Shown here piece after piece: positions 1,921-45,554 of a stretch of 64,000 nt of DNA (positions are counted from its first letter, which is position 1; each line of letters starts with the position of its first letter). The position numbers and the translations under genes are program-made. The notes under the pieces were generated by a model that was not told where the DNA came from, did not search any database, and worked only from the letters and a program-made list of their open reading frames with translations. Source of the DNA: Phyllobates terribilis (lineage: Eukaryota); contig NW_027362762.1 of NCBI RefSeq assembly GCF_046119375.1, forward strand, positions 932,232,001 to 932,296,000, written 5' to 3'.

Positions 1921-3059
1921 CAGTCATATCTAAAAGTTTTGAGATTTTTTTTTTTTTTTTTACAAAGTCAAAGTTTTCTGCCTTCTATAGCTGCAATTGA
2001 CATTAATTTTAGATTGCTATGAAGAGTGAAAACAAATTGCATAGTCATTCCTTGCCATGAAAAATCAAAAAAACCCATTTCCACTGAATTTCAGCCCTGC
2101 TACAAAAGGATCTACCAACAAGGACCAGGACCGTCTCCTAAAGAGGACTCAGCTACAGTATATAAACACCAGTGCAGAGCTTGCCCAAGGATGGCAGCAG
2201 GCAGGAGTCCGTGCATCTGAAAGCACAGTGAGGTGAAGGCTTTTTGAGGCGGCCTGGTGTCAAAAAAAAAAAGAAAAAATAAGTAATTTCTCTCAAAGAA
2301 AAACCATCAAGGACAGACTAATATTCTGCAGGAAGTACAGGGATTGGATAGCAGAGGTCGAGAGAAGGTTATTTTCTGTGATGAAGCCCCTTCAGACTGT
2401 TTGGGACATCTGGAAAAAGGAGGATTGTCCGGAAAAGAAAAGGTGACGCTGCCATGAGCCCTGTGTCTGCTAACAGTAAGGCATCCTCAGACCATTCATG
2501 TGTGGGGGCTTCTCATTCATGGAGGAGGCCCACTCACAATGTTGCTTAAGAACATTAAGGAATAGGATCTAAACCTCCTCCAAGAGCAACTTCTCCCAAC
2601 CATCCAGGAGCAATATTGTGATTAACAATGTTTTTTTCCAGCATGATGGAGACACAAAACATTTAAATTTTGGGGTCCATGGTCAGAAAATTCTCCAGAT
2701 CTCAATCCCATAAGAATCTTTGGTTAATCCTCAAAAAGCGGGTGGACAAACAAAATCACAGAACTAGTAAACCTCCAAGCACTGATGAGACAAGAATGGG
2801 TCATCAGGCAGGATTTGGCCCAGAAACCAGCTGCCAGGGGGGTAGGCCAAAAGTTTTGAATAATAAGGGTCAGCACTGTAAATATTGAGTCTTCACAAAC
2901 TTTTTTTTATTGACAATACATCAAGTTTAACAACTTGTGAAATACTTATAATTGTACTTCAGTAACCATAGAAATATCTGACGAAAAGATATAAAACCAC
3001 GGAAGAAGCAAACTCTGAAAACCAAACTGTGTCAGTCTCAAAACTTTTCACCACGACTG
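1921..3059 (+). mobile_element. Decayed Tc1-like transposon in a USP16 intron
   Basis: TA flanks; imperfect TIRs cagtc...aaaagttttgaga; remnant SPDLNP..NLWLILKKRV near 2680-2740. Confidence 0.75.
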
Positions 3060-3317
3060 TAGCGAACCTCCCCAGTCAGCAGCAACATTTTTCTTTCCCA
3101 TTGGTAGTCCAAGCTAGTAGTCATGGCCTTTATTGCTCCAGGTGTCCGATCTATGGCTACTTTATTCTCACAGCTCTTCTCCTTCTATATTGATCATACT
3201 CTGCCACCTAGAGGTTATTACTTACGTCCCCCTTTTGTCATTCATTTTAGAAAAGCCAATAAAAATGTGGCGTGAGTGACGTGCCCATTACAGGACCTGC
3301 AAGTTAACTGTTCTCAC

Positions 3318-3374
3318 CGTATCATCCAGCACAGGAAGAGACAGGTCAAGAAAAGGCTCATGGACCAAGGATAC
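3318..3374 (-). CDS. USP16: USP16 coding exon 11
   Basis: ttcaag|GTA ... ACG|gtgaga; VSLVHEPFLDLSLPVLDDT. Confidence 0.95.
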
Positions 3375-4122
3375 CTTGAAGAGACAAAAAATATATATAT
3401 GTATTTTTTATTTGATGTACTGATATCCTGACATCAGGAAGAGACAGGACTGAAGAGAAACAAAGACGACAAAGATAGTACTGAGTAGGGTTTGTTTGTT
3501 TTTTTTATTAGTACTCCCTCTGCATTGATCCTATTCAGTCTCGTGTTACAATACAGACTGTATTAATTTATCTGTTTCCCAGGAGATCCACCATTTTCTC
3601 CTCTCCTTCTCAAACAAAATCAGGTAAGTCTATTATACACTATGTATTAGGATGAAAAATAATGCTCAAAAAAATTAAATGGAGGGAACATTTATATCAC
3701 ACATTAAACTGTCTATGGCGCTATCTGGCAGCATCGGTTGCACTGATACATAATGACCCGGTGCTTTTCAACTATTTCAGTTCTGGGGAAAATAAAAGCA
3801 ACTTCTCCAATTTTTTTTTTAGCAGTGTATTTCCAAGTTTTATTTGTCACTCAACTGAGAGAAGAGACAAAAACTCCTCCCAAAGAAGGAGCATTTACTC
3901 AAGCAGTTTCCATTAGAAAGCGTCTCATCTTTGACCGCCTCAAAAAAAAAAAAAAAACCTCTAAGCACAAACCTTAAAGGTTTACATTATTGTTAAGCAA
4001 AACTACTCAGGGTGCACATATCCTTAAGAGTGTAAAAACTCATCCCAACTTAGTTTGCATTATGTGGGGGGGATTTATGAGTGTGAGCTATAAAACATAT
4101 AGCGGAAGTGCAATGAACTTAC

Positions 4123-9814: not shown

Positions 9815-9984
9815 CCTGTGGCCGCACTTCAGGCAGATCCAGACCGCATCGTCCTCTTCCTCGGAGCTGGCCTTCTCCTGGTAGTCTGTATGGCAGTCCT
9901 GACAGACGTTCCACTCCACATTGACCAGCGCCCTCTTCACCGCTCCTTCCTCCACTCCTTTCCGGATATGTCTGCACGTTGGTC
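9815..9984 (-). CDS. USP16: USP16 coding exon 2 (ZnF-UBP)
   Basis: tttcag|GA ... AGG|gtgcga; [30 protein letters not shown]...WICLKCGHR. Confidence 0.96.
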
Positions 9985-10482
9985 CTGAAAGACAAATCTT
10001 TAGTGAAGACCCAAGGTCCACGGGGGGGCAGGGAGCCTTACGCTGTGTTCACACCAAATTTTGGACACATGCAGCAATTTTGCAATGGATTAGCTAAGTG
10101 GAAAAAAAATCGGCAGAGGAATACAGTGTGTGCCGAGCAGATGATTATTCTATAATCTCAGCAACATGTTGCAGACATTTTCCATGCACAAAAAGTTTTT
10201 AAAATCCACAAATTGTGCGACATGTTACGTGACAGATTCAGCTCTGATTTCGCTCACAAATTCAATCGTTAGGGAATAGTGCAGCAAAAATCTGCAACAA
10301 ATCTGCTGCTTGTGCAGGTAAGTATAGTCCTTCCTCAGACAGGGAGGGTTTTTTTTCAGACAGATTTACGAGAAGAAAACCAGCAGAGTAACTCGGAGAT
10401 TTCAACCAATCTCACTAAATTAGAATATCATCAAAAAGTTATTTTTTTTTTTCAGTCTTCAATACAAAAAGTGAAACTCATA

Positions 10483-12317
10483 TACTGCTCAAAAAAATAA
10501 AGGGAACACAATGTAACTCCAAGTCAATAACACTTCTGTGAAATCTACCTGTACAGTTATGAAGCAACACTGATTGTGAATCAATTTATCCTGCTGTTGT
10601 GCAAAAGGAACAGACAACAGGTAGAAATGATAGACCATTAGCAAGATACCCCCTATAAAGGAGCGGTTCTGCAGGTGGTGACCACAGACCATTTCTCTGT
10701 TCTCATCCTTTTTGGCTGTTCTTTTGGTCATTTTGCCATTGCTCTCACCCCTAGAGGTACAGTAGCATGAGGCGGTGTCTACAGTACAACCCACAGAAGT
10801 TGCTCAGGTAGTGCAGTTCATCCAGAATTGCACATCAATGCGAACTGTGACAAGAAGGTTTGCTGTGTCTGTCAGCATAGTGTCCAGAGGCTGGAGGCGC
10901 TACCAGGAGACAGGCCAGTACACCAGGAGACGTGGAGGGGGGCCGTAGGAGGGCAACAACCCAGCAGCAGGACCGCTACCTCCTCCTTTGTGCAAGGAGG
11001 AACAGGAGGAGCACTGCCAGAGCCCTGCAAAATGACCTCCAGCAGGCCACAAATGTGCATGTGTCTGCACAAACGGTTAGAAACCGAGGGTGGTAGGAGG
11101 GCCCGACGTCCACAGATGGGGGTTGTGCTCACAGCCCAACACCATGCAGGACGCTTGGCATTTGCCACAGAACACCATGATTGGCAAAGTCGCCACTGGC
11201 GCCCTGTGCTCCTCACAGATGAAAGCAGGTTCACACTGAGCACATGTGACAGACGTGACAGAGTCTGGAGACGCCGTGGAGAGTGATCTGCTGCCTGCAA
11301 CATCCTTCAGCATGACCGGTTTGGCAGTGGGTCAGTAATGGTGTGGGGTGGCATTTCTTTGGAGGGCCGCACAGCCCTCCATGTCCTCGCCAGAGGTAGC
11401 CTGACTGCCATTAGGTACCGAGATGAGATCCTCAGACCTCTTGTGAGACCATATGCTGGTGCGGTTGGACCTGGGTTCCTCCAAATGCAGGACAATGCCA
11501 GACCTCATGTGGCTGGAGTGTGTCAGCAGGTCCTGCAAGATGAAGGCATTGAAGCTATGGACTGGCCCGCCCGTTCCCCAGACCTGAATCCGATTGTCAT
11601 GTCTCGCTCCATCCACCAACGTCACGTTGCACCACAGACTGTACATGAGTTGGAGGATGCTTTGGTCCAGGTCTGGGAGGAGATCCCTACAGGAGACCAT
11701 CCGCAACCTCATCAGGAGCATGCCCAGGCGTTGTAGGGAGGTCATACAGGCACGTGGAGGCCACACACAATACTGAGCCTCATCAGGAGCATGCCCAGGC
11801 GTTGTAGGGAGGTCATACAGGCATGTGGAGGCCACACACAATACTCAGCCTCATCAGGAGCATGCCCAGGCGTTGTAGGGAGGTCATACAGGCACGTGGA
11901 GGCCACACACAATACTGAGCCTCATCAGGAGCATGCCCAGGTGTTGTAGGGAGGTCATACAGGCACGTGGAGGCCACACACAATACTCAGCCTCATCAGG
12001 AGCATGCCCAGGCGTTGTAGGGAGGTCATACAGGCACGTGGAGGCCACACACAATACTGAGCCTCATTTTGACTTGTTTTAAGGACATTACATCAAAGTT
12101 GGATCAGCCTGTAGTGTGTTTTTCCACTTTAATTTTGGGGGGTGACTCCAAATCCAGGCTTCCATTGGTTAATAAATTTGATTTCCATTGATGATTTTTG
12201 TGTGATTTTGTTGTCAGCACATTCAACTTTGTACAGAACAAAGTATTCAATGAGAATATTTCATTCATTCAGATCTAGGATGTGTTATGAGTGTTCCCTT
12301 TATTTTTTTGAGCAGTG
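10483..12317 (+). mobile_element. Tc1-like transposon with degenerate transposase, nested in the IR of another Tc1
   Basis: TIRs actgctcaaaaaaataaagggaacac / gtgttccctttatttttttgagcagt with TA TSD; motifs [33 protein letters not shown]; stops and frameshifts. Confidence 0.92.
11707..12061 (+). repeat. Five tandem copies of a 71-bp unit spanning the transposase C-terminus and stop
   Basis: cctcatcaggagcatgcccaggcgttgtagg...cacacacaatactgag starting at 11707, 11778, 11849, 11920 and 11991. Confidence 0.95.
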
Positions 12318-37302: not shown

Positions 37303-37599
37303 TAGGGATGAGCGGACCCGTGGAAGTTTGGGTTCTGGTACACAACCTGAACTTTATTCCAAAGTTTGGTTCAGGTACCAGAACTGTACCAAAACTTGAA
37401 CTAGAACCCGAACCCCATTGAAAATAATGAGGACCCAAACTATTGAGCTGGAAAATATTCCCTCTCCCCAACGGACTTCCCCCGGAACTCCGAACATTGC
37501 AACAGACTTCTGGGAGAAGTTTGTGTTTGGAGTTTAGCACTGGACACTAACTGTCCGGTACGAACCCCGAACTTTTAAGTTTGTGTTTGCTCATCTCTA
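37303..37599. mobile_element. hAT MITE (TAGGGATGAGC family)
   Basis: TIR tagggatgagc / gctcatctcta; TSD ctcatagc/ctcacagc. Confidence 0.8.
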
Positions 37600-37840
37600 C
37601 TCACAGCTCCATTGGCAGAAAAATACAAAAAATTGGTTCTCGAAATATGGCGACACAAACAAATCTTTTTTTTCCTTTTTTCAACCCTTCTTTAAATTTT
37701 ATTTAAAACCAGTAAAAAAATATATACAGTACAGACCAAAAGTTTGGACACACCTTCTCATTTAAAGATTTTTCTGTATTTTCATAACTATGAAAATTGC
37801 ACATTCACACTGAAGGCATCAAAACTATGAGTTAACACAT

Positions 37841-38347
37841 TAACCAGGGGAGGAGTCCTGAGGAGATAATTTGCATATTCCCACTGCATTTTGGGGTAAG
37901 TGAAGAGTCTCCGCGAGCTCAAAGAACACTGGATTTTGGCTGTTGGAGCTGAAAAGAGGACATCGGTAAACCAGGGGAGGAGTCCTGAGGAGATAATTTG
38001 CATATTCCCACTGCATTTTGGGGTAAGTGAAGAGTCTCCGCAAGCTCAAAGAACACTGGATTTTGGCTGTTGGAGCTGAAAAGAGGACATCGGTAAACCA
38101 GGGGAGGAGTCCTGAGGAGATAATTTGCATATTCCCACTGCATTTTGGGGTAAGTGAAGAGTCTCCGCAAGCTCAAAGAACACTGGATTTTGGCTGTTGG
38201 AGCTGAAAAGAGGACATCGGTAAACCAGGGGAGGAGTCCTGAGGAGATAATTTGCATATTCCCACTGCATTTTGGGGTAAGTGAAGAGTCTCCGCAAGCT
38301 CAAAGAACACTGGATTTTGGCTGTTGGAGCTGAAAAGAGGACATCAG
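37841..38347 (+). repeat. Four tandem 127-bp monomers in the CR1 5'UTR
   Basis: Units start at 37841, 37967, 38094 and 38221; differences are limited to one or two positions per unit. Confidence 0.97.
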
Positions 38348-38432
38348 TAAACCACGCACCTACCGGCGCGCGCATTTTGAAGCTTTTTTTTTAAGCTTTT
38401 TTCACTGTTTTCAGAACATTAACAATAAGAAC

Positions 38433-39395
38433 ATGGAAGAGTCCAGGAGCCATTTGGTGAGCTGCATATCCTGCTACATGTTCACAGACTTGCCAGTGGA
38501 AAAGCCAAACTTCACATGCCAGAAATGCAAGCTTGTGTCCCTGTTGGAGGAAAAGTTGCGAAATCTAGAAGAGAGGTTAACTACCTTGAAAATCATTAAG
38601 GAAGGTGAAGAGTTCTTAGACAGAGCAGAATTATCTCTTCATGATTCAGAAAGAGAAGAAATTCGAACTGCACCTGACGAAACAGAGGAATGGAAGCATG
38701 TGACCCACAGAAGCAGGAGGATCGAGAGGCAGTCAGCACCCATACTGCTCAGGAACCAGTACCAGGCTCTCACACAGGAGAACCATGAAGAAATACAGCA
38801 AGATAAGACTTTGCCAGCAATGAATAACCTTGTAAGCCCTCAGAATCCTCCTGGATGGAGAAAGAAGAATGTTGTGAAGAAAAAACGGAGAGTGGTGGTC
38901 ATGGGGGATTCCCTGTTAAGAGGAACAGAGGCCGCTATCTGCAGACCAGACATAACCTCAAGAGAAATGTGCTGTCTTCCAGGAGCAAAAATTAAAGATG
39001 TGTCTGACAGGATATCAAGACTCTTCAGACCTACAGATCACTACCCATTCCTGCTAATACATGTGGGGACAAATGACACCGCAAGAAAGGACCTGGAAAC
39101 CATCTGCAGTGACTTTGAAGACTTAGGCAAGAAAGTGAAAGAATTGGGAGCGCAGGTGGTCTTCTCATCCATCCTCCCAGTGGATGGCCATGGAACAATG
39201 AGGTGGAATAAGATTCTACAGGTGAACAACTGGCTACGTCGATGGTGCCGTCAACAAGGATTTGGATTTCTGGATCACGGAATGAATTACCTATACGATG
39301 GACTACTTGCTAGAGATGGGGTGCACCTTACGAAGACTGGAAAACATGTATTTGGAAGTCGCCTTGCTACACTCATCAGAAGAGCTTTAAACTAG
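38433..39395 (+). CDS. CR1 ORF1p (N-terminal Cys finger/coiled coil + SGNH esterase)
   Basis: 320-aa open frame; CISCYMF...CQKC, GDSLLRG, IHVGTND, DGVHL. Confidence 0.93.
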   Translation: MEESRSHLVSCISCYMFTDLPVEKPNFTCQKCKLVSLLEEKLRNLEERLTTLKIIKEGEEFLDRAELSLHDSEREEIRTAPDETEEWKHVTHRSRRIERQSAPILLRNQYQALTQENHEEIQQDKTLPAMNNLVSPQNPPGWRKKNVVKKKRRVVVMGDSLLRGTEAAICRPDITSREMCCLPGAKIKDVSDRISRLFRPTDHYPFLLIHVGTNDTARKDLETICSDFEDLGKKVKELGAQVVFSSILPVDGHGTMRWNKILQVNNWLRRWCRQQGFGFLDHGMNYLYDGLLARDGVHLTKTGKHVFGSRLATLIRRALN

Positions 39396-39517: not shown

Positions 39518-42307
39518 ATGGGAGGAAGAGAAACCAATCACAAACTAAAATGTTTTTATACAAATGCACAAAGCATGGGCAACAAACAAGGAGAATTGGA
39601 ACTACTAATGCAGGAAAAGGAATACGATGTCATTGGAATCACTGAAACTTGGTGGGACGATACACATGATTGGAATAAAAGGCTAAAAGGATACAACTTA
39701 TTTGCAAGAAACAGACTTGATAAACGAGGAGGAGGTGTTGCATTGTATGTTAGAAAAGCATATATCTGCACAGAGATTGAAGCTTCAGAGACTGGGAGTT
39801 CTGTGGAAACTGTTTGGGTAAGAATACAAGGAGAGAACAACGGAAAGGACACCATTGTAGGCATTTACTACAGGCCACCTGGGCAAGCTGAAGATATGGA
39901 TGAACTCTTTATGTATCAAATGACCAAGTTCTCCAAAAAATACGACGTAGTGGTCATGGGAGATTTCAACTATCCAGACATTTGTTGGGAATCTCTCTCA
40001 AGTAAAACTAACAGGTCAAGCAAATTCTTATCCTCTCTTGCTGACAACTTTATCTTCCAAAAGGTAGGGGAGAAAACAAGGGGATCTGCTACTTTGGATC
40101 TAATCCTTATAAACAGGGAGGAAATGGTTGAGGAGGTAAAGGTGGCTGGGACCCTAGGAGGCAGCGATCATGCTATTATAGAATTTTGGATAACTAGAGG
40201 AGGAAGACATGTGAAGACTCAAACTTCAAGGTTAGATTTTAGAAAGGCAGATTTTAAGAGACTCAGAAAGAGAATAGGAGGGATCCAATGGCTGGATGTC
40301 CTTAAGGACAAAAATGTCCAGGAAGGATGGGAAATTTTTAAAAATGAGATTCTCAAAGCACAATCGTTAACAATCCCGAAAAGTAGGAAGAATGGGAAGC
40401 ATTTAAGGAAACCAGGATGGATGAACACAGAACTTAAACACATGCTAAAAAGAAAGAAAGAAATGTTTATTAAATGGAAAGAGGGAGGCATATCTAAAGA
40501 AGATTATAATGCAGTCTGCAGATCCTGCAGGGCACGTATCAGGTTAGCTAAAGCTGACAATGAATTAAGGCTTGCAAGAGATGTCAAAAGCAATAAAAAA
40601 GGATTTTGGGGGTATGTCAAAAGTAAAAGAAAAGTCAAAGATGCTATAGGATTTTTACAGGATGAAAATGGAGAAATGGTAAGAGAGGATGTTGAGAAGG
40701 CCGAACTTTTTAATTCCTATTTTGCATCTGTTTTCTCTCAGAAAGAAAATGTAACATCAACTGATCTTCACTGTCCTTTTAAAGGAATAGAGGAATCCAA
40801 GTTATCAGTAAACAGAAAGATTGTGAGGGAATATTTAGCTAACATAAATGAGTTCAAGTCTCCAGGTCCAGATGAATTACACCCCAGAGTACTGAAGGAC
40901 ATTGTAGAAGAAATTTTAGAACCACTCTCCATAATCTTTGAAAATTCTTGGAGAACAGGAGAAGTCCCAGAAGACTGGAGAAGAGCAAATGTTGTTCCTA
41001 TCTTCAAAAAGGGGAAGAAGGTGGACCCAGGGAACTATAGGCCGGTGAGTCTGACTTCTATACCAGGAAAGATCTTTGAACAAATTATTAAACAACATGT
41101 ATGTAAGTACATGGATAAGAATGAAGTGATTAACCAGAGTCAGCATGGGTTTGTAACTAACAAGTCATGTCAGACTAACTTAATTTCCTTCTATGACAGA
41201 ATCACTGACTGGGTGGATCAGGGAAATGCTGTAGATATAGTATATCTTGACTTCAGCAAAGCATTTGACAAAGTATCTCACATCATCCTTATTGAAAAAA
41301 TGACCAAGTATGCAATGGACCAGGCAACTGTTAGGTGGATTCATAACTGGCTTAGTGATCGGACTCAAAGGGTGGTTGTAAATGGCTTCACATCCAGCTG
41401 GATGAATGTCTCAAGTGGGGTACCACAGGGCTCCGTCCTGGGACCTGTATTGTTCAACATCTTTATCAATGATTTAGATGAAGGAATTGAGGGTAAACTG
41501 ATTAAATTTGCTGATGACACAAAGCTAGGAGGGATAGCTAATACTAGAGAAGAGAGAGAGAGGATTCAAAAAGACCTAAATAAACTGGAGCAGTGGGCAG
41601 CAACCAACAGAATGGTTTTTAACAGGGAAAAATGCAAAGTACTACATCTGGGCAATAAAAATGAAAAAAGCATATACAGAATGGGAGGAATAGAGCTAAG
41701 CAACAGTACATGTGAAAAAGACTTAGGTATACTAATAGATCATAGACTGAACATGAGTCAACAGTGTGATGCAGCAGCAAAAAAGGCAAATACAATTCTG
41801 GGATGTATTAACAGAAGCATACAGTCTAGATCACGTGAAGTCATTATCGGTCTTTACTCCTCTTTGGTCAGACCTCATCTGGAATACTGTGTACAGTTTT
41901 GGGCACCACATTTTAAAAAAGACATCGACAAACTGGAGCAAGTTCAGAGAAGAGCGACCAGAATGGTGACTGGTCTGCAAACCATGTCCTATGAGGAACG
42001 GTTGCAGGATTTGGGAATGTTTAGCTTGCAAAAAAGAAGACTGAGAGGAGACTTAATAGCTGTCTACAAATATGTCAAGGGCTGTCACATTGTAGAAGGA
42101 TCATCTTTATTCTCATTTGCACAAGGAAAGACTAGAAGCAATGGAATGAAACTAAATGGGAGGAGACACAGATTAGATATTAGAAAAAACTTTTTGACAG
42201 TTAGGGTGATTAATGAGTGGAACAGGCTGCCACGAGAGGTGGTGAGTTCCCCTTCAATGGACGTCTTCAAACAGAGGCTGGACAGACATCTGTCTGAGAT
42301 GATCTAG
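39518..42307 (+). CDS. CR1 ORF2p (APE endonuclease + reverse transcriptase)
   Basis: 929-aa open frame; NAQSM, GITETWW, GDFNYP, SDH; NYRPVSLTS, LDFSKAFDKV, GVPQGSVLGP, FADD. Confidence 0.97.
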   Translation: MGGRETNHKLKCFYTNAQSMGNKQGELELLMQEKEYDVIGITETWWDDTHDWNKRLKGYNLFARNRLDKRGGGVALYVRKAYICTEIEASETGSSVETVWVRIQGENNGKDTIVGIYYRPPGQAEDMDELFMYQMTKFSKKYDVVVMGDFNYPDICWESLSSKTNRSSKFLSSLADNFIFQKVGEKTRGSATLDLILINREEMVEEVKVAGTLGGSDHAIIEFWITRGGRHVKTQTSRLDFRKADFKRLRKRIGGIQWLDVLKDKNVQEGWEIFKNEILKAQSLTIPKSRKNGKHLRKPGWMNTELKHMLKRKKEMFIKWKEGGISKEDYNAVCRSCRARIRLAKADNELRLARDVKSNKKGFWGYVKSKRKVKDAIGFLQDENGEMVREDVEKAELFNSYFASVFSQKENVTSTDLHCPFKGIEESKLSVNRKIVREYLANINEFKSPGPDELHPRVLKDIVEEILEPLSIIFENSWRTGEVPEDWRRANVVPIFKKGKKVDPGNYRPVSLTSIPGKIFEQIIKQHVCKYMDKNEVINQSQHGFVTNKSCQTNLISFYDRITDWVDQGNAVDIVYLDFSKAFDKVSHIILIEKMTKYAMDQATVRWIHNWLSDRTQRVVVNGFTSSWMNVSSGVPQGSVLGPVLFNIFINDLDEGIEGKLIKFADDTKLGGIANTREERERIQKDLNKLEQWAATNRMVFNREKCKVLHLGNKNEKSIYRMGGIELSNSTCEKDLGILIDHRLNMSQQCDAAAKKANTILGCINRSIQSRSREVIIGLYSSLVRPHLEYCVQFWAPHFKKDIDKLEQVQRRATRMVTGLQTMSYEERLQDLGMFSLQKRRLRGDLIAVYKYVKGCHIVEGSSLFSFAQGKTRSNGMKLNGRRHRLDIRKNFLTVRVINEWNRLPREVVSSPSMDVFKQRLDRHLSEMI

Positions 42308-42674
42308 TGAATCCTGCTTTGAGCAGGGGGTTGGACCAGATGACCCAGGAGGTCCCCTCCAACTCTACCATTCTATGATTCTATATACTTAACAAAAAAG
42401 TGTGAAACAACTGAAAATATGTCTTATGTTCTAGGTTCTTCAAAGTAGCCACCTTTTGCTTTGATGACTGCTTTGCACACTCTTGGCATTCTCTTGATGA
42501 ACTTCAAGAGGTAGCCACCGGAAATGGTTTTCACTTCACAGGTGTGCCCTGTCAGGTTTAATAAGTGGGATTTCTTGCCTTATAAATGGGGTTGGGACCA
42601 TCAGTTGTGTTGTGCAGAAGTCAGGTGGATACACAGCTGATAGTCCTACTGAATAGACTGTTAGAATTTGTATT

Positions 42675-43673
42675 ATGGCAAGAAAAAAGCAGCGAAGTAA
42701 AGAAAAACGAGTGCCCATCATTACTTTAAGAAATGAAGGTCAGTCAGTCTGAAAAATTGAGCAAACTTTGAAAGTGTCCCCAAGTGCAGTTGCAAAAACC
42801 ATCAAGCGCTACAAAGAAACTGGCTCACATGAGGACCGCCACAGGAAAGGAAGACCAAGAGTCACCTCTGCTTCTGAGGATAAGTTTATCCGAGTCACCA
42901 GCCTCAGTTCTAGCAGCAGACACATCTCTACAACAACTGTTAAGAGGAGACTTTGTGCAGCAGGCCTTCATGGTAAAATAGCTGCTAGGAAACCACTGCT
43001 AAGGACAGGCAACAAGCAGAAGAGACTTGTTTGGGCTAAAGAACACAAGGAATGGACATTAGACCAGTGGAAATCTGTGCTTTGGTCTGATGAGTCCAAA
43101 TTTGAGATCTTTGGTTCCAACCACCATGTCTTTGTGCGACGCAGAAAAGGTGAACGGATGGACTCTACATGCCTGGTTCCCACCATGAAGCATGGAGGAG
43201 GAGGTGTGATGGTGTGGGGGTGCTTTGCTGGTGACACTGTTGTGGATTTATTCAAAATTGAAGGCATACTGAACCAGCATGGCTACCACAGCATCTTGCA
43301 GCGGCATGCTATTCCATCCGGTTTGCGTTTAGTTGGACCATCATTTATTTTTCAACAGGACAATGACCCCAAACACACCTCCAGGCTGTGTAAGGGCTAT
43401 TTGACCAAGAAGGAGAGTGATGGGGTGCTACGCCAGATGACCTGGCCTCCACAGTCACCAGACCTGAACCCAATCGAGATGGTTTGGGGTGAGCTGGACC
43501 GCAGAGTGAAGGCAAAAGGGCCAACAAGTGCTAAGCATCTCAGGGAACTCCTTCAAGATTGTTGGAAGACCATTTCCGGTGACTACCTTTTGAAGCTCAT
43601 CAAGAGAACACCAAGAGTGTGCAAAGCAGTCATCAAAGCAAAAGGTGGCTACTTTGAAGAACCTAGAATATAA
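42675..43673 (+). pseudogene. Tc1 transposase pseudogene
   Basis: ATG at 42675 followed by an in-frame TGA near 42750 and a short in-frame deletion in the DNA-binding region. [14 protein letters not shown] and SPDLNPIE are retained. Confidence 0.88.
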
Positions 43674-43809
43674 GACATATTTTCAGTTGTTTCACACTTT
43701 TTTGTTAAGTATATAATTCCACATGTGTTAATTCATAGTTTTGATGCCTTCAGGGTGAATGTACAATTTTCAAAGTCAAGAAAATACAGAAAAATCTTTA
43801 AATGAGGTG

Positions 43810-43977
43810 NNNNNNNNNNNNNNNNNNNNNNNNNNNNNNNNNNNNNNNNNNNNNNNNNNNNNNNNNNNNNNNNNNNNNNNNNNNNNNNNNNNNNNNNNNN
43901 NNNNNNNNNNNNNNNNNNNNNNNNNNNNNNNNNNNNNNNNNNNNNNNNNNNNNNNNNNNNNNNNNNNNNNNNNNNNN
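43810..43977. other. Assembly gap (N run)
   Basis: 168 N. Confidence 1.

Positions 43978-45554
<1,577 letters not shown>

What the first reader, a model, noticed from the sequence alone, without database searches (positions are those of the whole stretch)
37841..38347. CR1 5'UTR built from 127-bp monomers, each with a perfect octamer motif
Seen: four almost identical monomers, with ATTTGCAT at 37869, 37996, 38123 and 38250 and a GGGGAGGAG box in each. Known: ATGCAAAT is the POU/Oct site, and mouse L1 uses tandem 5' monomers as an additive promoter. Inference: a convergent monomer promoter in a CR1, possibly driven by maternal or pluripotency POU factors (Pou5f3 class) for germline or early-embryo expression. 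I do not recall this architecture being described for CR1.
Basis: partly seen in the sequence, partly recalled or inferred. Interest (0 to 1): 0.75.

Follow-up and report, generated by a model that had tools for sequence, protein, structure and literature searches.

The report
CR1 jumping gene with repeat-built promoter leader
An intact frog CR1 jumping gene opens with four near-identical 127-base repeats, each holding a protein-binding "octamer" site that is also kept in related frog and snake CR1 elements, so it is probably a repeat-built promoter like mouse L1's, though transcription was not tested.

Summary
Window 37842-38354 holds 4.0 tandem 127-bp units, 99% alike, with ATTTGCAT at the four stated positions. 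They lie at the 5' end of an intact CR1 inserted in a Tc1 transposon.

The scan had already noted this family at nine or more other places in the same poison-frog genome, with about 2.7 to 21 units (unchecked notes).

New here is the comparison with other species.
- A Dendrobates tinctorius copy has 2.3 diverged 128-bp units.
- A Ranitomeya imitator relative has one unit.
- A snake CR1 (Erythrolamprus reginae; ORF1 46% and ORF2 54% identical) has 3.0 homologous 125-bp units in the same phase.
- ATTTGCATA is invariant in all four, and it is the longest invariant run.
- The GGGGAGGAG box and the GGTAAGT splice-donor-like site are not conserved.
- Independent insertions begin within six bases of the unit start (CCAGG), which fits a transcription start in each unit.
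- A lizard CR1 (Zootoca vivipara) has unrelated 183/305-bp monomers at the same place.

No RNA evidence was obtained, so promoter activity and the factor that binds are inferred. A specific Pou5f3 role is unsupported, because there is no adjacent Sox site.

I found no published description of CR1 monomers. I class this as a new variant of a known kind, of moderate to high interest.

The parts
37842..38349 (+). Four complete 127-bp monomers (units start at 37842, 37969, 38096, 38223). GC 47%, CpG observed 8 against 26 expected, no ATG on the sense strand.
   Evidence: TRF; unit-by-unit comparison; ATG count
38350..38354 (+). AACCA, the first 5 nt of a fifth unit. The array therefore starts and ends in the same phase.
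37869..37881 (+). ATTTGCATATTCC in unit 1: the octamer ATGCAAAT on the minus strand plus TTCC. It repeats at 37996, 38123 and 38250. ATTTGCATA is invariant in the window, D. tinctorius, R. imitator and snake units.
37842..37850 (+). AACCAGGGG, the element's 5' terminus and unit start. CCAGG is invariant across the four lineages. This is the inferred transcription start region.
   Evidence: junction with the Tc1 target; 5' termini of L001 and L013; loose ends at 38227; alignment
37895..37901 (+). GGTAAGT, a splice-donor-like heptamer (once per unit; first copy given). It is not conserved in D. tinctorius, R. imitator or the snake.
   Evidence: no matching joint
38350..38432 (+). Non-repeated tether between the array and ORF1. 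It holds a CpG-decayed GC palindrome (38353-38372) followed by CATTTTGA, and an acceptor-like TTTTCAG ending at 38414.
38433..39395 (+). ORF1, 320 aa, SGNH/GDSL esterase type, intact.
39518..42307 (+). ORF2, 929 aa, endonuclease plus reverse transcriptase, intact.
42308..42385 (+). 3' UTR ending in ATTCTATGATTCTAT, the CR1-type 8-nt repeat end.
37700..37841 (.). Flank: the Tc1-like DNA transposon into which the CR1 inserted. The other side is 42386 to about 43806. About 8 nt of target (GTGGAATT) are missing at the junction.
   Evidence: transposase ORF

Best explanation
The array is the repeat-built 5' leader and internal promoter of a young, apparently competent CR1 LINE.

Each 127-bp unit carries a start region (CCAGG at unit positions 3-7). 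About 24 nt downstream lies a conserved factor-binding block, ATTTGCATA(T)TCC, which is a POU-type octamer plus a TTCC flank. Transcription starting in the first unit carries the whole array into new copies. Starts in inner units give shorter arrays that begin in the same phase. Upstream units add further binding sites for downstream starts, as in mouse L1.

Shown here: the anatomy, the in-phase 5' ends, the conservation, and the variable unit number in three species. Inferred: that RNA starts there, that the octamer binds a POU factor, and that units add up in strength.

The unit is an old CR1 5' module shared by frog and snake CR1 lineages. It was not invented in this frog.
For: 1. The array lies inside the retrotransposed unit, at its very 5' end, in independent insertions: the window copy in a Tc1, the D. 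tinctorius copy L001 in a 36-bp satellite with a 4-bp duplication, and the snake copy L013.

2. The 5' termini fall at unit position 1 (window), 4-6 (L001) and 4 (L013). In addition, three different upstream sequences join at position 5 in contigs of two runs. Given the first terminus, the chance that three more fall within 5 nt of it in a 127-nt unit is about 6e-4 (my arithmetic).

3. Unit number varies: 4.0, 2.3, 3.0. Unchecked scan notes give about 2.7 to 21.

4. ATTTGCATA is invariant and is the longest invariant run in the four-lineage alignment. These lineages differ by up to 54% in ORF1 and 46% in ORF2 amino acids. The first half of the unit is as conserved as, or more conserved than, ORF1 DNA: 73% against 68% for window versus R. 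imitator, and 60% against 57% for window versus snake.

5. There is no ATG on the sense strand of the frog leaders: 0 observed against about 3.7 expected on the unique sequence of the window leader. Antisense ATGs are at or above expectation. This fits a scanned mRNA leader.

6. CR1 5' UTRs are promoters in chicken: CR1-B in a reporter assay (PMC2734521) and CR1-H in oocytes (bioRxiv 10.64898/2026.03.19.712899).

7. A lizard CR1 (L011) has about 12 unrelated 183/305-bp monomers at the same position, carrying ETS-like and GC-box motifs.
Against: - No transcript evidence. The two RNA raw-read runs laid no reads (no test), and the two contig runs are only guessed to be RNA.
- The units are not CpG-rich (CpG observed/expected about 0.3), unlike L1 monomers.
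- The octamer lies downstream of the inferred start, so its conservation could reflect a role in the RNA rather than in the DNA.
- The snake units each carry one ATG with a 5-codon uORF, so ATG avoidance is not universal.
- Between the two close frog subfamilies the unit (86%) has diverged more than ORF1 (93%).
- Loose ends from de Bruijn contigs are weak evidence for insertion termini.
- The D. tinctorius copy lacks part of the last unit and the tether palindrome, so not every part is needed, or else that copy is dead.
Confidence: 0.6

Rival explanations
1. The array is transcribed leader RNA whose conserved block works at the RNA level, for example in translation control, ORF1 protein binding, packaging in cis, or splicing. 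The real promoter would then lie elsewhere, such as in the tether with its GC palindrome.
For: The block lies downstream of the inferred start. The sense strand of the frog leaders lacks ATG. The tether palindrome is conserved in the window, a Logan contig (L006) and Zootoca. The window units carry a consensus splice donor facing an acceptor-like site that ends 18 nt before the ATG. Zootoca units differ by a 122-nt GT..AG insert, as if some had been spliced.
Against: The splice donor is absent from the D. tinctorius, R. imitator and snake units, and no GT..AG joint was seen. The invariant run is exactly a well-known DNA-binding octamer. The D. tinctorius copy has intact ORFs but no palindrome. 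There was no Rfam match.
Confidence: 0.17
2. The repeats are a neutral by-product with no selected role for repetition. They would arise by slippage, unequal exchange or reverse-transcriptase template jumping at the 5' end. A single unit would be the working promoter and extra units would be passengers.
For: Units within a copy are 99-100% identical, so the arrays are recent or homogenised. The R. imitator copy has one unit. The array starts and ends on the same AACCA, as expected from microhomology-mediated jumping.
Against: Arrays in the same phase are kept in frog and snake lineages that are very distant. A lizard CR1 built arrays from a different unit at the same place. This recurrence suggests that repetition is favoured. 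The R. imitator copy carries 7 nt matching a preceding unit's end, so it may be 5' truncated.
Confidence: 0.15
3. The array is an assembly artefact or a post-insertion local duplication peculiar to this locus.
For: None found.
Against: Contigs of independent runs hold the unit at several-fold the depth of the tether. Arrays are present in two other assemblies from other species. Scan notes report many other copies.
Confidence: 0.02

Closest known systems
Mouse and rat L1 monomeric 5' UTR (A, Tf and Gf monomers plus tether)
   Same: A tandem array of near-identical units sits at the 5' end of full-length elements. Unit number varies between copies. A non-repeated tether lies before ORF1. Start signals are presumed to lie inside the units. 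(PMC5381506, for the L1 facts.)
   Different: The LINE clade differs (CR1, esterase-type ORF1). There is no sequence similarity. Units are 125-128 bp against about 200 bp. The units are CpG-poor rather than a CpG island. Copy 5' ends fall in one phase. The unit is conserved between very distant CR1 lineages, whereas L1 5' UTRs turn over quickly. Promoter activity is untested here.
Chicken CR1-B and CR1-H 5' UTR promoters
   Same: Same LINE clade. In chicken the 5' UTR acts as an internal promoter, and CR1-H is active in oocytes (PMC2734521; bioRxiv 10.64898/2026.03.19.712899).
   Different: Those papers describe no tandem monomers or octamer, so far as my term searches within them showed. No sequence comparison with chicken was possible with these tools.
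Octamer-dependent cellular promoters and enhancers (histone H2B, immunoglobulin, snRNA distal elements), bound by POU factors
   Same: A perfect ATGCAAAT, conserved with its immediate flank (named from established knowledge).
   Different: Here the site is inside the transcribed region of a retrotransposon and is repeated every 127 bp. There is no adjacent Sox site, and no convincing Staf/ZNF143 (SPH) site, as the spacing is off and the site is not conserved. Binding is untested.

Membership tests
CR1-clade LINE | ORF2 with an apurinic-type endonuclease followed by a reverse transcriptase | tested here: met
   Pfam Exo_endo_phos (1e-16) and RVT_1 (1e-34) in the 929-aa ORF2
CR1-clade LINE | ORF1 with an esterase (SGNH/GDSL) domain, as in CR1/L2-type elements | tested here: met
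   Lipase_GDSL_2 scores 32.6 bits (E 1.4e-07), just under the 32.9 cut-off. Homologues from turtles, lizards and birds carry the same domain.
CR1-clade LINE | 3' end with short 8-nt direct repeats of the ATTCTRTG type, and no poly(A) | tested here: met
   The element ends ...CCATTCTATGATTCTAT at about 42385. The D. tinctorius copy has the same end. The defining motif is taken from established knowledge of CR1.
L1-style monomeric promoter (works like; not homologous) | Tandem array of units at the 5' end, followed by a non-repeated tether | tested here: met
L1-style monomeric promoter (works like; not homologous) | Unit number varies among copies of the family | tested here: met
   4.0 in the window, 2.3 in L001, 3.0 in L013. 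Scan notes of 2.7-21 units in this genome were not checked by me.
L1-style monomeric promoter (works like; not homologous) | Transcription starts inside the units | tested here: inconclusive
   5' termini of independent insertions cluster at unit positions 1-6. No RNA start data were obtained.
L1-style monomeric promoter (works like; not homologous) | Each unit has promoter activity and units add up | not testable with these tools
   Needs reporter assays.
L1-style monomeric promoter (works like; not homologous) | CpG-rich units controlled by methylation | tested here: not met
   8 CpG observed against 26 expected in the array, two per unit; both substitutions between units are CpG decay.
POU/octamer-driven element | Perfect ATGCAAAT, kept under sequence divergence | tested here: met
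   ATTTGCATA is invariant in the four lineages.
POU/octamer-driven element | Sox-Oct composite site (Pou5f1/Pou5f3 pluripotency class) | tested here: not met
   The sequence beside the octamer is GGGAAT/GGAAT, with no CATTGT- or CTTTGT-type site in any lineage (reading).
POU/octamer-driven element | Binding by a POU factor and dependence of transcription on it | not testable with these tools
   Needs gel shift, ChIP and mutated reporters.

The most novel reading that the evidence does not exclude
The octamer monomer is an ancient, portable promoter cassette of a CR1 group shared by squamates and Neotropical poison frogs. Arrays are built and rebuilt by the reverse transcriptase jumping from the capped 5' end of one CR1 RNA onto the array-tether border of another, which would explain why units begin exactly at the RNA start and why the array starts and ends on AACCA. 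The frog family itself may have come by horizontal transfer from a squamate: its ORF2 is 78-80% identical to tegu fragments but only 39-45% identical to other frog CR1s.
Probability: 0.2. Interest if true: 0.8.

Novelty: new variant of a known kind. Interest (0 to 1): 0.6.

Why it matters
Monomer-built promoters are the textbook peculiarity of rodent L1. Finding the same design in CR1, the main LINE of reptiles, birds and many amphibians, shows that it is a general solution to the LINE problem of carrying one's own promoter.

Three features make this case useful:
- The unit is conserved between very distant CR1 lineages, unlike L1 leaders, so it offers a defined, conserved site (ATTTGCATA) to mutate.
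- The element is intact and young in a giant frog genome, where LINE activity bears on genome-size growth.
- The in-phase 5' ends give a simple, testable prediction for where RNA starts.

If a POU factor drives it, this would link CR1 expression to a known class of oocyte and embryo regulators.

Tried and rejected
- RNA evidence. One search for sequencing runs and one read-laying run were allowed. The two RNA raw-read runs, from another organism label, laid 0 reads, which is no test. The two 'RNA?' contig runs cannot show starts or strand.
- Splice reading (donor in each unit to the acceptor ending 18 nt before the ATG). The donor is not conserved in the three other lineages, and no such joint was seen; the single joint found was a low-depth CT..CA skip. 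I keep it only as a minor rival.
- GGGGAGGAG box. Not conserved beyond CCAGG.
- Staf/ZNF143 (SPH) site after the octamer. TTCCCA is present in the window unit, but the spacing to GCAT is 2 nt short and CCCA is lost in the other lineages (reading).
- Exact look-up of the window ORF1 in public assemblies: not on record.
- Pattern scan of metagenome contigs for the start block plus octamer block: three chance bacterial matches, no CR1.
- Rfam scan of 37500-38600: nothing.
- Other CR1 leaders. Varanus has no array and no octamer module. Chelydra has a different leader, with TATAAA and a 1.2-fold 281-nt duplication. R. imitator copies L003, L005 and L007 are 5' truncated and uninformative.
- Literature. 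Six full-text searches found no description of CR1 5' monomers. The library lacks most subscription papers and Repbase notes, so this is not proof of novelty.

Full report
**Observation.**
Tandem Repeats Finder reports one array at 37842-38354: period 127, 4.0 copies, 99% matches, no indels. Read unit by unit, the four units differ by two substitutions, both of CpG/CpA type. The array ends in a 5-nt stub, AACCA, so it starts and ends in the same phase. ATTTGCAT stands at 37869, 37996, 38123 and 38250. A 50-nt stretch holding GGGGAGGAG and the octamer occurs four times without mismatch.

**What the element is.**
- Downstream of an 83-nt non-repeated tether lie two intact ORFs.
- ORF1 (38433-39395, 320 aa) has an SGNH/GDSL esterase domain. 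ORF2 (39518-42307, 929 aa) has endonuclease and reverse-transcriptase domains.
- The element ends in ATTCTATGATTCTAT, the CR1-type 3' end.
- It sits inside a Tc1-like DNA transposon. The transposon's other, intact terminal repeat (reverse complement of 43690-43750) shows the empty target. From this, the CR1 begins at AACCAGGGG, and about 8 nt of target were lost.
- The closest annotated ORF1 is from Dendrobates tinctorius (91%), so the window comes from a poison frog.

**Earlier notes of the scan.**
The same family was noted at nine or more other places of this genome, with array lengths of 342 to 2641 bases, about 2.7 to 21 units. Two follow-ups reached the verdict 'layout like mouse L1, promoter untested'. 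I could not read those loci, so I use them only as leads.

**Relatives fetched here.**
- **D. tinctorius copy (L001).** ORF1 is 91% and ORF2 91% identical, and both are intact. It has 2.3 units of 128 bp that are 100% alike within the copy and 86% identical to the window unit. It lies in a 36-bp satellite with a 4-bp target duplication, which fixes its 5' end at unit position 4-6.
- **Ranitomeya imitator copy (L002).** ORF1 is 64% identical but ORF2 only 39%. It has one unit, whose first 65 nt align at 73-78% with the Dendrobates-type units and keep GATAATTTGCATATTCC exactly. It also carries 7 nt that match the end of a preceding unit, so it may be 5' truncated.
- **Snake copy (L013, Erythrolamprus reginae).** ORF1 is 46% and ORF2 54% identical. 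It has 3.0 units of 125 bp that are homologous to the frog unit: 62-65% over the whole unit, and 73% over 78 nt by blastn at E 4e-6. The units are in the same phase. The element begins at CAGGAATC, and the array ends just after CCAG.
- **Four-lineage alignment.** The invariant runs are CCAGG at the unit start and ATTTGCATA, which is the longest. The GGGGAGGAG box and the GGTAAGT donor-like site of the window unit are not conserved.

**Other CR1 leaders.**
- A Zootoca vivipara CR1 (L011; ORF2 65% identical) carries about 12 units of 183 or 305 bp of unrelated sequence, 99% alike. They carry CAGGAAGT and GGGCGGAGC motifs. The longer form differs by a 122-nt insert with GT..AG ends.
- That array ends exactly at a GC palindrome, CGCGCGCCTAGCGGCGCGCG, followed by CATTTTGA. 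The same palindrome stands, CpG-decayed, at 38353-38372 of the window, immediately after the array, and also in a Logan contig.
- A Chelydra CR1 has a different leader, with TATAAA and a partial duplication.
- A Varanus CR1 has neither an array nor the octamer module.
- So tandem 5' units recur in CR1, different units can occupy the same place, and the octamer unit is one old module among several.

**How it most likely works.**
- Four independent insertions in three species begin within six bases of the unit start. In addition, contigs of two runs show three different upstream sequences joined at unit position 5. Random 5' truncation would not produce this clustering.
- The pattern is what one expects if RNA starts at the CA of CCAGG in a unit and is copied to its end. 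Starts in inner units of a long array would give progeny with fewer units in the same phase.
- The conserved octamer block would then lie about 24-31 nt inside the transcript in the first unit, and about 100 nt upstream of the start in every following unit. This is the logic of the mouse L1 array.
- The frog leaders have no ATG on the sense strand, while antisense ATGs are at or above expectation. This fits a scanned mRNA leader. The snake unit, however, has one ATG with a 5-codon uORF, so this argument is limited.
- In chicken, CR1 5' UTRs are promoters, and one is active in oocytes.

All of this is indirect. No RNA data were obtained: two raw-read RNA runs laid nothing, and two contig runs cannot show starts.

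**Which factor binds.**
ATGCAAAT is the classic POU site (established knowledge). The invariant flank TTCC suggests a composite site. No Sox motif adjoins the octamer, so nothing favours Pou5f3 over the ubiquitous Pou2f1 or other POU factors.

**How the arrays might grow.**
The array starts and ends on AACCA. This fits addition of units by template jumping of the reverse transcriptase from an RNA 5' end onto the array-tether border of a second RNA, and it also fits unequal exchange. This is inference only. The majority tether variant seen in the contigs lacks the CA of the stub, so the microhomology may be shorter in other copies.

**Comparison with what is known.**
The layout works like the mouse and rat L1 monomer promoter (PMC5381506). 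It is not related to L1 in sequence. It is also CpG-poor, so it fails that L1 feature. Six full-text searches found no description of monomeric CR1 leaders, but the library is incomplete.

**Verdict.**
The monomer-promoter reading is well supported by comparative anatomy but untested at the RNA level (confidence 0.6). The octamer is very likely functional. The Pou5f3 assignment is speculative. I rate it a new variant of a known kind, with interest 0.6.

Noticed in passing
window 39518-42307; proteins P0157, P0175, P0003, P0124: ORF2 of this frog CR1 is 78-80% identical to tegu (Salvator merianae) RT fragments, 76% to a Logan contig protein and 65% to Podarcis. It is only 39-45% identical to other frog CR1 ORF2s (R. 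imitator, Leptobrachium). This suggests possible horizontal transfer between Neotropical squamates and poison frogs, or an amniote-type CR1 lineage retained in frogs.
   Followed up: partly
L011:335-2877 (Zootoca vivipara): This lizard CR1 has about 12 tandem 5' units of 183 or 305 bp. The longer form carries a 122-nt insert with GT..AG ends, as if some units had been spliced before retrotransposition.
   Followed up: partly
window 38353-38380; L011:2879-2906; L006:31-50: A GC palindrome (CGCGCGCC-TANC-GGCGCGCG) lies right after the arrays, followed by CATTTTGA in the window and Zootoca (L006 reads ACTTATAA there). It is conserved between the frog CR1, the Zootoca CR1 and a Logan contig. In the window copy two CpGs have decayed, and the majority contig variant restores them. 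Its role is unknown.
   Followed up: partly
L002, L003, L007 (Ranitomeya imitator): R. imitator CR1s have ORF1 64-71% identical to the window element but ORF2 only 39-45% identical. The 5' UTR/ORF1 part and the ORF2 part therefore seem to have different histories, which points to module exchange.
   Followed up: no
L001:5617-5662 and 9956-11450; also L001:5064-5396 and 3000-3710: The D. tinctorius CR1 copy is inserted in a long 36-bp satellite, with a 4-bp target duplication (ATCA). Further 33-bp and 36-bp arrays lie upstream.
   Followed up: partly
L012:2277-3000 (Chelydra serpentina): This turtle CR1 leader of about 724 nt has no sense-strand ATG (13 expected), a TATAAA box with a GC box, and a 1.2-fold duplication of about 281 nt.
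   Followed up: no
window 42768-43673 and 44318-45349: Two different Tc1/mariner-type transposase ORFs lie close together. The first belongs to the element that hosts the CR1. A run of N lies between them, near 43810-43980, and was left untouched.
   Followed up: no
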